64,000 nt of DNA from IMGVR_UViG_3300041411_000129:186001-250000; one strand, 5' to 3'; shown: positions 3,350-13,892, numbered from the stretch's first letter. Notes: generated from the letters alone by a model not told the origin. A program made the numbers and translations.

Positions 3350-3423
3350 TCGCAATCTTCTAAACACAGCGCTCATCAGCGGAAACGTTGATGGGCGTTC
3401 TTTACTGCCATACGGGAGGATTT

Positions 3424-3789
3424 ATGCCTTACGACATAGTCAAGCAAAACTTGACGAGGTTAGGCACGTTGACCGGAGGTAAGTTAGGCGCCATCGACGT
3501 TATACGCGAATTGAAACAAGGTGGTTTGAGCATCTGGCTTTCTGACGATGCGCTTAACTACACGCGGCATTCGCTGCACGAATATAAGTACGCTGAACAA
3601 GTAACTGACGATCGGATCATTCTGTCCTGGCTGGACCTTCCGCCGTACCAGATTGGCATTCGCAGTCATTTCTATCTACATTCGGCGGCTGGCTTTTTGA
3701 TGTCCGCAATGAGCGATTGGCCTATGGGCTTTCGTGCTTTAATGATTCGCAAAGCTGAACAAGCACTCCAACTTTACGACAACAACTGA
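3424..3789 (+). CDS. Hypothetical protein
   Basis: GGGAGGA SD before ATG 3424. Confidence 0.7.
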   Translation: MPYDIVKQNLTRLGTLTGGKLGAIDVIRELKQGGLSIWLSDDALNYTRHSLHEYKYAEQVTDDRIILSWLDLPPYQIGIRSHFYLHSAAGFLMSAMSDWPMGFRALMIRKAEQALQLYDNN

Positions 3790-11690: not shown

Positions 11691-11725
11691 CATCCGTAAA
11701 AAGTTACGGAAGTAGTAAATAAGAT

Positions 11726-11799
11726 GTTCGAACAGCGCCGCGCGTAGCCGCCTCTTCGTAGTGCAGCCGCCCATTGGGCATTTCGCGGCCTGTTCGAAC
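11726..11799 (+). ncRNA. Structured hairpin leader 5' of tRNA-Asn
   Basis: GTTCGAACAG/CTGTTCGAAC (10 bp) plus GCCGCG/CGCGGC. Confidence 0.45.
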
Positions 11800-11804
11800 T
11801 CTGT

Positions 11805-11881
11805 TCCGCGATAGCTCAGTTTGGTAGAGCAAACGGCTGTTAACCGTTGGGTCCCTGGTTCGAGTCCAGGTCGTGGAGCCA
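11805..11881 (+). tRNA. tRNA-Asn(GUU)
   Basis: Canonical cloverleaf, loop CTGTTAA, G73, encoded CCA. Confidence 0.95.
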
Positions 11882-11896
11882 ATTTCTTGTTGTAAT

Positions 11897-11974
11897 GGTG
11901 GGCTTAGCTCAGTTGGTTAGAGCAGCGGCGGGCTTTGCTGTGTGTCCTAGGTTCGAATCCTAGAGTCCACCCCA
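11897..11974 (+). ncRNA. tRNA-His-like RNA (G-1:C73) with non-canonical anticodon loop GGGCTTT
   Basis: Intact acceptor GTGGGCT/AGTCCAC, D and T arms, CCA; no Y32/U33/R37. Confidence 0.8.
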
Positions 11975-11981
11975 TATTCTC

Positions 11982-12070
11982 GAGACTGTAGCACAGTGTT
12001 AGTGCGATCAGCAGGCGTGGTAATTCTCGTCGGCTGGAATGCGTGGGTTCGATTCCCAACGGTCTCACCC
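11982..12070 (+). ncRNA. tRNA-like RNA with expanded anticodon arm
   Basis: GAGACTG/CGGTCTC acceptor, GCAC/GTGC D stem, TTCGATT T loop, 20-nt insert in anticodon arm, ends ACCC. Confidence 0.7.
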
Positions 12071-12106
12071 CATTTCTTTGCAGGGATGCGTAATCGAGTA
12101 TTAAGC

Positions 12107-12781
12107 ATGTCTGTTGATATCAGTAACTATCTGATCGCTACACCACTTCCAGTATCTGAAACCAATCCAGTCGCCTTAGAGCTGCTTGGATCTCTGGCAT
12201 TGATTCAATGTCCTGAGGTTGTTTCTCAGCTGGAAGATGGGTCTGTTCAATTCACCGCACCTACTAAAGGTGCGTCCAGTAAGAGTACTCACCGTACTCG
12301 CACTGAATGGAAAGAACCTGAGTACTGGGCGTTGTCTAGTGCAGCTAAGCACTGGAGTCGCCAGACGATGACTGTTACTAAAGTCAACTCTGCTCAGAAG
12401 GTGGTGGTTGCACAGATTCACGTCAAGGATGCTACAACGCCTCCTTTGAAAGTGTTCTGGAACAAAGGTAAGTTGACGATGGGTTTCCGCGGTAGTTTCG
12501 CCGATCCTACAATCGTTAACTATACCCTCCATACCGACGTACCCTTGGGCGTTCCGTTCAAGATCAGTATCGGTGTGACAGCCAGCGGTTCGGTGTCTGT
12601 CAACGCATCATGTCAAGGGGTTCCTTCCCTAAAGAACGCGTTGAAGTTGAGCAGCACTTGGTTTGACCGCGTACTTCAGTTCCATGGCGGCGTCTACAAC
12701 CAAGTCGACTACACCGATCTTACCTCTGACGAGGATGGTTCGATCTGCATTATCAGTGAGTTGTCTACAACTCACGAATGA
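12107..12781 (+). CDS. Polysaccharide lyase family 7 (alginate lyase-like)
   Basis: RTRTEWKE, QIH and QFHGGVYNQ match the three conserved PL7 strands; upstream part of the ORF-track call overlaps a tRNA-like RNA, so start set at ATG 12107. Confidence 0.85.
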   Translation: MSVDISNYLIATPLPVSETNPVALELLGSLALIQCPEVVSQLEDGSVQFTAPTKGASSKSTHRTRTEWKEPEYWALSSAAKHWSRQTMTVTKVNSAQKVVVAQIHVKDATTPPLKVFWNKGKLTMGFRGSFADPTIVNYTLHTDVPLGVPFKISIGVTASGSVSVNASCQGVPSLKNALKLSSTWFDRVLQFHGGVYNQVDYTDLTSDEDGSICIISELSTTHE

Positions 12782-12787
12782 TTCAAT

Positions 12788-12939
12788 GACTTCTATAGCT
12801 CAGTTGGTAGAGCGTCGTCACTCTCTTTAGGTCGCGGGTTCGAGTCCCGTATCCCCAGCAACGGGGATTAGCTCAGTCGGTAGAGCAGAAGAAAATTACG
12901 AGACGAAGGTCGTAGGTTCAATCCCTGCTAGAAGTCCCA
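12788..12939 (+). ncRNA. Nested double tRNA: outer cloverleaf containing a circularly permuted complete tRNA
   Basis: Acceptor ACTTCTA pairs with TAGAAGT at the end of the second unit; ATCCCC/GGGGAT hairpin; swapped anticodon stems TCGTC/GACGA and GAAGA/TCTTT. Confidence 0.85.
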
Positions 12940-12944
12940 ATTAA

Positions 12945-13020
12945 TGATGCAAGCCTGCGCCCGACACTAAGAGCCCGACGATAGTCATATAGCTCACTAC
13001 GTTGGCCGCAGGCGGCATCA
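12945..13020 (+). ncRNA. Rod-like spacer RNA A
   Basis: TGATGC/GCATCA, GCCTGCG/CGCAGGC, CCGAC/GTTGG, GAGC/GCTC, GAC-GATA-GTC. Confidence 0.6.
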
Positions 13021-13028
13021 CCCTACAC

Positions 13029-13105
13029 GCGTTCATAGTTCAGCTGGTTAGAATACTCGCCTGTCACGCGAGAGGTCGGGGGTTCGAGTCCCCCTGGACG
13101 CGCCA
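13029..13105 (+). tRNA. tRNA-Asp(GUC)
   Basis: Canonical cloverleaf, loop CTGTCAC, G73, CCA. Confidence 0.95.
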
Positions 13106-13121
13106 TATTCAAATGCTTCAT

Positions 13122-13248
13122 GATTCGCATAGCTCAGTGGTAGAGCGCCCCCACAACGGTTCGACTCCGTACGCATCCATCCTTCGGTTTGGGTGTGACC
13201 TGGATAACATGGGGGAGGTCGATGGTTCAAGTCCATCTGTGAATCCCA
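13122..13248 (+). ncRNA. tRNA-like RNA (G-1:C73, CCA) with permuted T-arm/acceptor module in the anticodon loop
   Basis: ATTCGCA/TGTGAAT; CCCCC/GGGGG; inner ACGG-TTCGACT-CCGT plus CGCATCC/GGGTGTG. Confidence 0.8.
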
Positions 13249-13254
13249 ATTCAA

Positions 13255-13322
13255 TGATCCTTGCAGCGGCTGCGCCTGAGTAAATGCTGTCTTAACTTGA
13301 CGTTACGGCGTCAAGAGGATCA
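13255..13322 (+). ncRNA. Spacer RNA B
   Basis: TGATCC/GGATCA closing helix; TTGACG/CGTCAA hairpin. Confidence 0.5.
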
Positions 13323-13332
13323 CCCGTTACAC

Positions 13333-13418
13333 GGAGAGGTTCCCGAGCGGTCAAAGGGATCAGACTGTAAATCTGACGCCTAACAGCTTCGAAGGTTCGA
13401 ATCCTTCTCTCTCCACCA
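13333..13418 (+). tRNA. tRNA-Tyr(GUA)
   Basis: Type II cloverleaf, loop CTGTAAA, A73, CCA. Confidence 0.95.
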
Positions 13419-13439
13419 TTTACCGCTTTACCGGTTTAT

Positions 13440-13572
13440 CCCTTGGTCAGCCGAAAGGGGCTGGGCGGCTATCTGTTCGATACGGTACGTGAGCGCTTTA
13501 GGCAGCTGGCCATAGGCCGCTCACGTTCGTCGTTCAGAAGCGTCGAGAGTTCAACTCTCTCACTCGGGGCCA
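13440..13572 (+). ncRNA. Third nested tRNA-like RNA
   Basis: Outer T arm GAGAG-TTCAACT-CTCTC, ACTCGGG-G-CCA end, TGGGCGG/TCGTTCA stem; inner TTCGATA loop plus CGTGAGC/GCTCACG helix. Confidence 0.65.
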
Positions 13573-13576
13573 TACA

Positions 13577-13714
13577 TGACTCCCTGTGGGACATAGGGGC
13601 TATAGCTTCGTTCGTGTTAGTTGTGTGTAGCGGTCTGCTCTGCGGAGCGCGGCCCAACATGGGAACGAGGGTTTCTGATTATCGCCGGGTGTTCGGTAAT
13701 CAGAGATGGAGTCA
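13577..13714 (+). ncRNA. Multibranched spacer RNA C
   Basis: TGACTCC/GGAGTCA closing helix; CTTCGTTC/GAACGAGG; TCTGATTATCG/CGGTAATCAGA. Confidence 0.6.
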
Positions 13715-13722
13715 ACATACAT

Positions 13723-13834
13723 GGCAAGATGATCTCTGCGAAGATGATCGGAGTACACTCTAGAAGAGTGACTTAACTAGTGCAGTTAAGGACCTAACCG
13801 TTACTGAGGTTCGATTCCTCGTCTTGTCTCACCA
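13723..13834 (+). ncRNA. Atypical type-II (Leu-like) tRNA-like RNA
   Basis: GGCAAGA/TCTTGTC acceptor, TAG in central hairpin, 7-bp variable arm, canonical T arm, TC-ACCA end. Confidence 0.55.
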
Positions 13835-13836
13835 AA

Positions 13837-13867
13837 CATAAAGCCCGGCATTCCGCCGGGCTTTATG
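13837..13867 (+). terminator. Terminator ending the RNA cluster
   Basis: CATAAAGCCCGGC/GCCGGGCTTTATG, 13-bp stem. Confidence 0.8.
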
Positions 13868-13892
13868 CTGTCACTAACTAAACTGAAGAGAA

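What the first reader, a model, noticed from the sequence alone, without database searches (positions are those of the whole stretch)
12945..13722. Three spacer RNAs with shared boundaries, each directly 5' of a tRNA
A (12945-13020): ATGATGC...GCATCA, then CCCTACAC, then tRNA-Asp. B (13255-13322): ATGATCC...GGATCA, then CCCGTTACAC, then tRNA-Tyr. C (13577-13714): ATGACTCC...GGAGTCA, then ACATACAT, then the Leu-like RNA. All share an A-TGA.../...TCA terminal helix and a TACAY-ending linker, but their interiors differ (rod versus multibranch). Inference: RNase P cleavage of the downstream tRNA releases them as independent sRNAs, or they govern processing.
Basis: partly seen in the sequence, partly recalled or inferred. 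Interest (0 to 1): 0.6.

Follow-up and report, generated by a model that had tools for sequence, protein, structure and literature searches.

The report
Small RNAs inside phage tRNA array
Three folded non-tRNA RNA pieces lie between the tRNA genes of an uncultured soil jumbo phage, are kept with compensating mutations in five related genomes, and carry the end signals that RNase P reads on tRNAs and 4.5S RNA, so they are probably cut out as small stable RNAs whose job is unknown.

Summary
Spacers A, B and C are strongly folded + strand RNA elements in a tRNA array (11805-13835) of a 254-kb rhizosphere jumbo phage. They fold as a rod, a three-way junction and a perfect four-way junction.

Five related metagenomic genomes keep them, with 99% of pairs intact and compensatory changes in every element. 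No Rfam family matches. More distant relatives of the phage lack them.

The "shared boundaries" are not special to the spacers. They are the leader and trailer grammar of the whole array: ...AAU|G or ...UACAY|G before each module, and helix-N-CC(A/C) after it. TGA/TCA is not invariant: A has TGG/CCA in three genomes, a compensatory change. TACAY belongs to the downstream tRNA's leader.

A and B copy the E. coli pre-4.5S RNA layout (U-1, G+1:C72, A73, CCC). RNase P probably cuts at both ends and releases 70-140-nt RNAs.

B behaves as an optional cassette. It is absent, moved, or replaced by an unrelated module B' in relatives. That weakens the idea that it governs processing of the downstream tRNA.

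No RNA data exist, and the function is unknown. These are new members of a known kind, like the T4 rnaC/rnaD stable RNAs.

The parts
12940..13028 (+). Spacer A. Linker AUUAAU, then G12946 as the predicted 5' end. Rod hairpin of 25 pairs. Terminal helix 12946-12950 with 13015-13019 (U12945-A13020 can also pair). A13020 is discriminator-like, followed by CCC 13021-13023 and UACAC 13024-13028, the leader of tRNA-Asp.
   Evidence: MFE z -6.0. In 6 genomes 99.3% of cells are paired, with compensatory changes at columns 8/79 and 34/54. CM R1 scores 106-114 bits on + against 24-32 bits on -.
13249..13332 (+). Spacer B. Linker AUUCAAU, then G13256 as the predicted 5' end. Terminal helix 13256-13261 with 13316-13321. 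Hairpin 1 is 13263-13290, with the conserved loop GCGCCUGAG. Hairpin 2 is 13296-13315 and abuts the 3' strand of the terminal helix. A13322 and CCC 13323-13325 follow, then GUUACAC 13326-13332, the leader of tRNA-Tyr.
   Evidence: MFE z -2.5. In 3 genomes 94.5% of cells are paired and 4 pairs changed on both sides. It is an optional cassette.
13573..13722 (+). Spacer C. Linker UACAU, then G13578 as the predicted 5' end. Terminal helix 13578-13583 with 13708-13713 (U13577-A13714 can also pair). Three arms follow: 13584-13605, 13606-13670 and 13671-13707. They form a four-way junction with no linker bases. The tail is A13714 ACA, then UACAU 13718-13722, the leader of X4.
   Evidence: MFE z -3.7. 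In 6 genomes 47 pairs are 99.6% paired, 3 are compensatory and 8 are G-U pairs that fit only the + strand. CM R2 scores 163-171 bits.
12789..12939 (+). X1, the upstream neighbour of A. It is a tRNA-shaped RNA with an encoded CCA. Its anticodon loop is replaced by a circularly permuted tRNA-like unit: T arm, closed acceptor-like hairpin, D arm.
   Evidence: Fold. Rfam YrlA gives 40.9 bits, E 4.6e-7, below the gathering score of 69. Compensatory replacements are seen in L003 and L006.
13029..13105 (+). tRNA-Asp(GUC), with CCA encoded.
   Evidence: ARAGORN and Rfam, 68.1 bits.
13123..13248 (+). X2, the upstream neighbour of B. It is a tRNA body with a 63-nt insert in place of the anticodon loop. 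The insert holds a T-arm-like hairpin plus an 8-bp hairpin. CCA is encoded.
   Evidence: The tRNA model scores 48 bits across the insert. Fold.
13333..13418 (+). tRNA-Tyr(GUA), with CCA encoded.
13440..13572 (+). X3, the upstream neighbour of C. It is tRNA-like, with an acceptor stem, a T arm, GCCA, and an anticodon arm of about 80 nt.
   Evidence: Fold z -3.6. In L003 and L095 the long arm is replaced by a different helical sequence.
13723..13834 (+). It is tRNA-like with a T arm and an acceptor stem but no 7-nt anticodon loop. Its 3' end is CACCA in 4 genomes and TACTA in 2.
   Evidence: Rfam gives only tRNA-Sec at 19.6 bits. Fold. A compensatory GAUC to GGCC change is seen in L006.
13841..13868 (+). 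Terminator-like hairpin GCCCGGC-ATTCC-GCCGGGC followed by TTTAT, closing the array.
   Evidence: Sequence. The same 25-mer recurs at G000:172530-172554. The consensus scan did not list it because it has only 4 T in 8.
11805..12069 (+). Start of the array: tRNA-Asn, tRNA-Ser, and a 'tRNA-Leu' with a 22-nt anticodon loop.

Best explanation
A, B and C are autonomous structured RNA modules in a polycistronic phage array. The array is built from tRNAs, tRNA-like chimeras and non-tRNA modules.

Each module is closed by a terminal helix that imitates an acceptor stem. It has U at -1, a G+1:C72 pair and a purine at 73. A and B then have CCC, and C has ACA.

Inferred steps, none shown:
1. The array is transcribed as one RNA, from upstream of tRNA-Asn to the hairpin at 13841.
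2. Host RNase P cuts at U|G at the 5' foot of each spacer helix: 12945|12946, 13255|13256 and 13577|13578. It does this the way it cuts pre-4.5S RNA.
3. RNase P also cuts at the 5' end of the next tRNA: 13028|13029, 13332|13333 and 13722|13723.
4. 3' exonucleases trim the 5-7-nt tail back to the helix.

This leaves discrete stable RNAs of about 75 nt (A), 70 nt (B) and 140 nt (C).

The short repeated linkers (CCA-AUUCAAU, UUACAY) double as recombination joints, so modules are swapped between phages as cassettes.

What the released RNAs do is not known. The most likely job is a trans-acting one, binding a protein or an RNA of the host or phage tRNA machinery, rather than a cis role in maturing the neighbouring tRNA.
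For: Structure and selection:
- All three fold far better than shuffles.
- In six genomes the pairs stay 99.3% (A), 99.6% (C) and 94.5% (B) intact. Compensatory double changes occur in each: A 2 pairs, C 3 pairs, B 4 pairs.
- Many G-U pairs and the CM scores fix the + strand.

Processing grammar:
- The module table shows every module preceded by ...AAU|G...CAU|G or ...UACAY|G and followed by N-CCA (tRNAs, X1-X3) or N-CCC (A, B).
- In L093, B' ends G-CCA.
- E. coli ffs, read from the annotated record, has leader ...CUCUCAAU|G and a mature 3' end ...CCCCC-A-CCC. This is the same layout as A and B.
- RNase P is known to process pre-4.5S RNA, phage M3 RNA and phage C4 RNA, and to pair with RCCA (PMC11143913).

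Autonomy:
- B is missing in L093 and L094, where X2 joins tRNA-Tyr through 9 nt.
- B sits before a non-tRNA module in L006.
- B is replaced at the same site in L095, and in the 147-kb contig of run X8, by the unrelated B'. B' also occurs between tRNA-Ser and X1 in L094 and upstream of X1 in L093.

Transcription:
- No promoter-like site was found inside the array.

Precedent:
- T4 annotates two small stable RNAs, rnaC and rnaD, right behind tRNA-Arg in its tRNA cluster.
Against: - There is no expression or end-mapping data. None of the 24 runs holding the stretch is RNA, and the laid runs are DNA contigs.
- C lacks the CC of the RCCA signal (A-ACA).
- A is always found as X1-A-Asp and C as X3-C-X4 (6 of 6 genomes), so a cis link to a neighbour cannot be excluded for them.
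- Conservation is shallow. CM searches find A and C in only the 6 close genomes out of 84 sources. Each compensatory change is one or two events.
- The host and its RNase P are unknown.
- No target complementarity was found within the array.
Confidence: 0.55

Rival explanations
1. The spacers are cis-acting elements only. They would be self-contained hairpins that keep neighbouring tRNA-like modules from misfolding into each other. They could also block 3' exonucleases or set the order of cleavage. After processing they would be degraded and never act as RNAs of their own.
For: - Closing terminal helices are the common trait of inter-tRNA stretches in relatives of this phage.
- A and C keep fixed neighbours in all 6 genomes.
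- Much of the stem sequence is free to covary.
Against: - B is dispensable for tRNA-Tyr (L094, L093) and is interchangeable with the unrelated B'.
- Loop sequences are strongly conserved: both outer loops of C are invariant, and GCGCCUGAG in B is kept while its stem changes.
- Simple insulation needs neither an acceptor-like N-CCC end nor a 138-nt four-way junction.
Confidence: 0.25
2. The spacers are decaying remnants of former tRNA or tRNA-like genes, or scars of mobile elements that target this array. They would have no present function.
For: - The array is a target of mobile DNA. L003 has a 650-nt endonuclease-coding insert in the anticodon loop of tRNA-Tyr.
- Module content differs between close relatives.
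- The elements are absent from more distant relatives.
Against: - Pairs are kept through double substitutions.
- Of the substitutions in stems, nearly all preserve pairing.
- Fold z-scores are -6.0 and -3.7.
- No residual D-loop or T-loop motifs are present, and no tRNA model matches A, B or C even at E 10.
Confidence: 0.1
3. The spacers are regulatory or catalytic cis elements of a known class: intrinsic terminators or attenuators, self-cleaving ribozymes, or tiny ORFs starting at the ATG.
For: - Each begins with AUG.
- Each has a stable hairpin.
Against: - No U tract follows any of the three helices. The tails are CCCUACAC, CCCGUUACAC and ACAUACAU.
- No ribozyme or other Rfam family matches at E up to 10.
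- The 6-9-codon frames have no Shine-Dalgarno sequence. In L006 the frame of A loses its stop and runs into tRNA-Asp.
- AUG is part of the leader shared with X1, X2 and tRNA-Ser.
Confidence: 0.03

Closest known systems
Phage T4 rnaC (species 1) and rnaD (species 2) small stable RNAs
   Same: - They are non-decoding RNAs of 119-139 nt.
- They are encoded on the tRNA strand inside a phage tRNA cluster, directly behind a tRNA.
- A homing-endonuclease gene sits in the same cluster.
- Their function is still unknown.
   Different: - No sequence relation was seen.
- rnaC carries a tRNA-type T arm and rnaD ends in ACCA, so they resemble X1-X4 more than A, B or C.
- A, B and C have no tRNA arms apart from the acceptor-like helix.
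E. coli 4.5S RNA precursor and other hairpin-type RNase P substrates (phage phi80 M3 RNA, P1/P7 C4 RNA)
   Same: - The leader ends ...CAAU.
- G+1 opens a long helix.
- The 3' end is C72-A-CCC, followed by an A/U-rich trailer. This is the same as in A and B.
- RNase P processing of these RNAs is established (PMC11143913).
   Different: - A, B and C have no SRP domain IV motif and no Rfam SRP match.
- They lie inside a tRNA array.
- C has A-ACA instead of A-CCC.
- Cleavage has not been tested.
YrlA (bacterial Y RNA-like, RF02553). This concerns neighbour X1, not the spacers.
   Same: - X1's inner unit has the YrlA order: T arm, closed acceptor-like hairpin, D arm.
- M. smegmatis YrlA is cut by RNase P and receives CCA (PMC4201824).
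   Different: - The score is 40.9 bits against a gathering score of 69.
- The phage has no Rsr/TROVE gene.
- The stem that binds Ro60 in YrlA is replaced in X1 by a second, complete tRNA body with CCA.

Membership tests
Any Rfam 15 family | Covariance-model score at or above the gathering score | tested here: not met
   Only tRNAs pass in the window. At E up to 10 nothing credible overlaps A, B or C. Relatives also show only tRNAs.
tRNA | Cloverleaf with D and T loops and a 7-nt anticodon loop | tested here: not met
   ARAGORN and RF00005 find nothing in 12940-13028, 13249-13332 or 13573-13722. C has a four-way junction but no T-loop or D-loop motif.
Hairpin-type RNase P substrates (pre-4.5S-like) | U-1, G+1:C72 at the foot of a coaxial helix, purine 73, C74 C75 | tested here: met
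   A has AAU|G...C-A-CCC and B has CAAU|G...C-A-CCC (G-CCC in L006). B' has CAAU|G...C-G-CCC or G-CCA. C is only partly met (ACAU|G...C-A-ACA).. The reference ffs was read.
Hairpin-type RNase P substrates (pre-4.5S-like) | Actual cleavage by RNase P at the predicted bond | not testable with these tools
   This needs an in vitro assay or 5'-end mapping. No RNA runs are available.
Phage tRNA-cluster stable RNAs (T4 rnaC/rnaD type) | Encoded within a phage tRNA cluster on the tRNA strand, between or behind tRNAs | tested here: met
.
Phage tRNA-cluster stable RNAs (T4 rnaC/rnaD type) | Accumulate as discrete stable RNAs during infection | not testable with these tools
   None of the runs that hold the phage is RNA.
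Intrinsic terminator | G+C-rich hairpin followed by a U tract | tested here: not met
   No U tract follows the closing helix of A, B or C. The scan lists no site at any of the three closing helices. Its only hit inside a spacer is a chance-level internal hairpin in C at 13596-13609: 2 sites were found in the region against 2.5 expected.
Conserved structured ncRNA (general) | Pairs kept by compensatory changes in independent genomes | tested here: met
   A has 2 pairs, C has 3 and B has 4 with changes on both sides. Sliding the 3' partner by 1-3 columns drops pairing to 17-50%. There are few independent events, so support is moderate.

The most novel reading that the evidence does not exclude
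The array is a phage 'RNA cassette operon'. In this reading the tRNA-processing machinery is used as a general release system for a fast-evolving, recombining set of non-tRNA and chimeric tRNA-like RNAs. A, B, B', C, X1-X4 and the many unknown helix-closed modules in about 80 related jumbo phages would belong to it. These RNAs would act in phage-host conflict, for example as decoys or inhibitors of host tRNA-targeting nucleases, RNase P, the CCA-adding enzyme or Ro/Rsr-type RNA surveillance.
Probability: 0.12. Interest if true: 0.8.

Novelty: new member of a known kind. Interest (0 to 1): 0.48.

Why it matters
Phage tRNA arrays are usually read as codon-usage or anti-defence tRNA supplies, and the DNA between the tRNAs is ignored. 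In this phage that DNA encodes conserved, strongly folded RNAs. These RNAs use the same end signals as tRNAs and 4.5S RNA, and they are shuffled like cassettes among related phages.

If they are released as stable RNAs, they add new families to a class known since the 1970s (T4 species 1 and 2 RNAs) whose function has never been explained. They also offer several small, well-defined molecules on which that question could be tested.

There is a practical point too. tRNA-array 'spacers' of jumbo phages look like a rich, unannotated source of structured RNAs, none of which is in Rfam.

Tried and rejected
- **Cultured-phage relatives.** Megablast found none. Distant blastn matched only the tRNAs. 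tblastn with the nearby NrdD found two remote phages.
- **Pattern scans that gave only chance hits.** The A pattern hit L088 and L089, both coding. The C-X4 junction hit L091 and L096, both eukaryote-like. The B pattern hit L099 and L100, both coding. The B' pattern found nothing in IMG/VR. The C pattern found nothing in GTDB genomes.
- **CM searches.** Models for A and C, run over 84 sources of about 1 Mb, found no distant homologues.
- **Rsr/TROVE gene as a partner for the Y-RNA-like X1.** None is present in the 254-kb genome.
- **Expression.** No RNA run was found. The laid runs are DNA contigs and show only strain variants.
- **Pairing between A, B or C and other array RNAs.** The best z was -2.3, which is not meaningful. 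The first attempt timed out.
- **Small ORFs, terminators and ribozymes.** All were rejected on sequence and Rfam grounds.
- **Modules D and E of L094.** Their folds are not better than shuffles, so they are not claimed as RNAs.

Full report
**Setting**

The window is bases 186001-250000 of a 253,921-bp IMG/VR virus record with direct terminal repeats. DNA of this stretch is found in rhizosphere, root and soil metagenomes, and in no RNA run. It has no close cultured relative.

The finding lies in a + strand array at 11805-13835. ARAGORN and Rfam call five tRNAs there: Asn, Ser, an odd 'Leu', Asp and Tyr. An alginate-lyase-family ORF is embedded at 12107-12781. A terminator-like hairpin at 13841-13868 follows the array, and its 25-mer recurs elsewhere in the genome. 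No sigma-70-like promoter lies inside the array.

**Observation**

The three spacers are as described, with their 5' coordinates one base late. They fold much better than shuffled sequence:

| Spacer | z-score | Shape |
|---|---|---|
| A | -6.0 | rod |
| B | -2.5 | terminal helix plus two hairpins |
| C | -3.7 | 7-bp terminal helix plus three arms, a four-way junction without linker bases |

**What surrounds them**

Each spacer follows an unusual tRNA-shaped RNA that ends in an encoded CCA.
- X1 (12789-12939) is a tRNA whose anticodon loop holds a circularly permuted tRNA-like unit. This gives a sub-threshold YrlA match of 40.9 bits.
- X2 (13123-13248) is a tRNA body with a 63-nt insert in the anticodon loop.
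- X3 (13440-13572) has an anticodon arm of about 80 nt.
It is tRNA-like but has no anticodon loop.

The region is therefore an array of many kinds of structured RNA, not tRNAs separated by junk.

**Relatives**

The embedded ORF retrieved 80 IMG/VR loci. BLAST and covariance models for A and C found the spacers in only a narrow clade. That clade is the window, L003, L006 and three metagenome contigs L093, L094 and L095. A sixth variant is a 147-kb contig in run X8.

Within this clade the structures are maintained:
- A: 25 pairs, 99.3% paired. A-U changes to G-C in the terminal helix, and G-C changes to A-U in the inner helix.
- C: 47 pairs, 99.6% paired, three pairs changed on both sides, eight G-U pairs.
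- B: terminal helix and hairpin 2 kept through four double changes, while the loop GCGCCUGAG stays constant.

Sliding the 3' partners destroys the pairing in every case. The number of independent events is small, so this is moderate, not overwhelming, evidence of selection on structure.

**Boundaries**

Listing all modules shows that the 'shared boundaries' are the junction grammar of the whole array.
- After each CCA comes a short A/U-rich linker.
- Before each module comes ...AAU|G or ...CAU|G (tRNA-Ser, X1, X2, A, B, B', C) or ...UACAY|G (Asp, Tyr, X4; C also fits; in L006 X3 has the same UACAU leader before a C, ...UACAU|C).
- The TGA/TCA of A becomes TGG/CCA in three genomes, so the helix is conserved and not the motif.
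- TACAY stays in front of tRNA-Tyr in L094, where no spacer B exists. It is therefore the tRNA's leader.

What A and B do share is an acceptor-like end: U-1, G+1:C72, A73 (G in L006), then CCC. B' has G-CCC, and in L093 a true G-CCA.

I read E. coli ffs from the annotated K-12 record. Its precursor has ...CUCUCAAU|G, and the mature 4.5S RNA ends ...CCCCC-A-CCC. This is the same arrangement. RNase P is known to process pre-4.5S RNA, phage M3 RNA and phage C4 RNA, and its P15 loop pairs with RCCA (PMC11143913). C has the U|G:C-A part but ACA instead of CCC.

**Cassette behaviour**

Module order in the six genomes:

| Genome | Order |
|---|---|
| window | ORF-X1-A-Asp-X2-B-Tyr-X3-C-X4 |
| L003 | as the window, with tRNA-Tyr split by a 650-nt endonuclease-coding insert |
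| L095 | as the window, but with B' in place of B and the same CCCGUUACAU linker |
| L094 | Asn-Ser-B'-X1-A-Asp-D-X2-Tyr-E-X3-C-X4 (no ORF, no B) |
| L093 | B'-X1-A-Asp-X2-X3-C-X4 (no B, no Tyr) |
| L006 | ORF-X1-A-Asp-D-B-(helix-flanked tRNA-like)-X2-X3-C-X4 |

- B and B' are optional, movable and interchangeable. A and C keep their neighbours.
- Identity levels are mosaic. L006 has 99% ORF identity but 82% in A. L003 has 83% ORF identity but 97% in A. This points to recombination, for which the repeated linkers are natural joints (inference).

**Mechanism**

Shown:
- structured, conserved, + strand elements
- acceptor-like ends
- cassette variation

Inferred:
- co-transcription of the array
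- RNase P cuts at both ends of each spacer
- exonucleolytic trimming
- accumulation as RNAs of about 75, 70 and 140 nt

Unknown: function. I favour a trans-acting role over a cis processing role, for three reasons. B is dispensable for tRNA-Tyr. Loops are conserved. The ends are more elaborate than insulation requires. A cis role for A and C is not excluded. Terminator, ribozyme and micro-ORF readings fail on sequence and Rfam evidence.

**Comparison with known systems**

The closest system is the pair of small stable RNAs rnaC and rnaD behind tRNA-Arg in the T4 tRNA cluster. That cluster also holds a homing endonuclease gene. Those RNAs have tRNA-type features, like X1-X4. A, B and C are closer in design to hairpin-type RNase P substrates such as pre-4.5S RNA.

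None of A, B, B' or C belongs to an Rfam family. They are new sequence families within a known kind.

In more distant relatives, the stretches between tRNAs also hold strongly folded modules closed by helices of 10-14 bp. None is in Rfam. The phenomenon is therefore wider than this window.

**Verdict**

This is a real feature, correctly observed. Interest is moderate as it stands. It would be higher if the modules prove to be released RNAs with a role in phage-host conflict.

Noticed in passing
window 12789-12939 (X1); L003 2553-2728; L006 6683-6857: This is a 'tRNA inside a tRNA'. The outer tRNA body has a CCA end. Its anticodon loop is replaced by a permuted tRNA-like unit: T arm, closed acceptor-like hairpin, D arm. 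The inner hairpin is ATCCCC/GGGGAT in the window and CACCGC/GCGGTG with a 31-nt loop in L003. Both anticodon-type stems covary. It resembles YrlA (40.9 bits, below the gathering score), but the phage has no Rsr gene.
   Followed up: partly
window 13123-13248 (X2) and 11982-12069 ('tRNA-Leu'): Both are tRNA bodies with oversized anticodon loops. X2 has a 63-nt insert with a T-arm-like hairpin. The 'tRNA-Leu' has a 22-nt loop. They may be non-decoding tRNA mimics.
   Followed up: partly
L003 3157-3806: In a close relative, tRNA-Tyr is split in the anticodon loop by a ~650-nt insert. The insert encodes a NUMOD3 plus phage-endonuclease-I-like protein, a homing-endonuclease type. Joining the flanks does not restore the UGUAAA loop, so the tRNA may be inactivated or need an unusual splice.
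   Followed up: partly
window 12107-12781: An alginate lyase family 2 protein (PF08787, E 2.5e-42) is encoded in the middle of the tRNA array. About 80 related viral contigs hold it. It is absent from the array in L094. This hints at a host that makes alginate-type polysaccharide.
   Followed up: partly
L012 2537-2673; L021 2145-2280; L026 3206-3345: A shared ~135-nt module closed by a 14-bp helix (TTTTGAAATTAGCT...AGCTAATTTCAAA) sits between tRNAs in three more distant relatives. No Rfam match was found. Other inter-tRNA stretches there are also closed by helices of 10-14 bp.
   Followed up: no
L011 6764-6885 and L026 about 3400-3510: A shared module ends ...CCGGTACTGACC-ACCA just before a tRNA. 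This is another non-tRNA module with an NCCA tail.
   Followed up: no
L006 7294-7420: A tRNA-like unit with T arm GCGGG-TTCGAAT-CCCGC is enclosed by an 11-bp helix (GAGCTTATCAG...CTGATAAGCTC). It lies downstream of spacer B in that genome.
   Followed up: no
window 11691-11804: A long inverted repeat (GTTCGAACAG...CTGTTCGAAC) encloses a G+C-rich stretch just upstream of tRNA-Asn. It is conserved in L003, L006 and L094. It could be a promoter or operator region, or a 5' processing structure of the array.
   Followed up: no
window 13834 (X4 3' end); L006 7960-7966: X4 ends CACCA in four genomes and TACTA in two (L006, L093). An encoded CCA is therefore not essential for this tRNA-like RNA.
   Followed up: no
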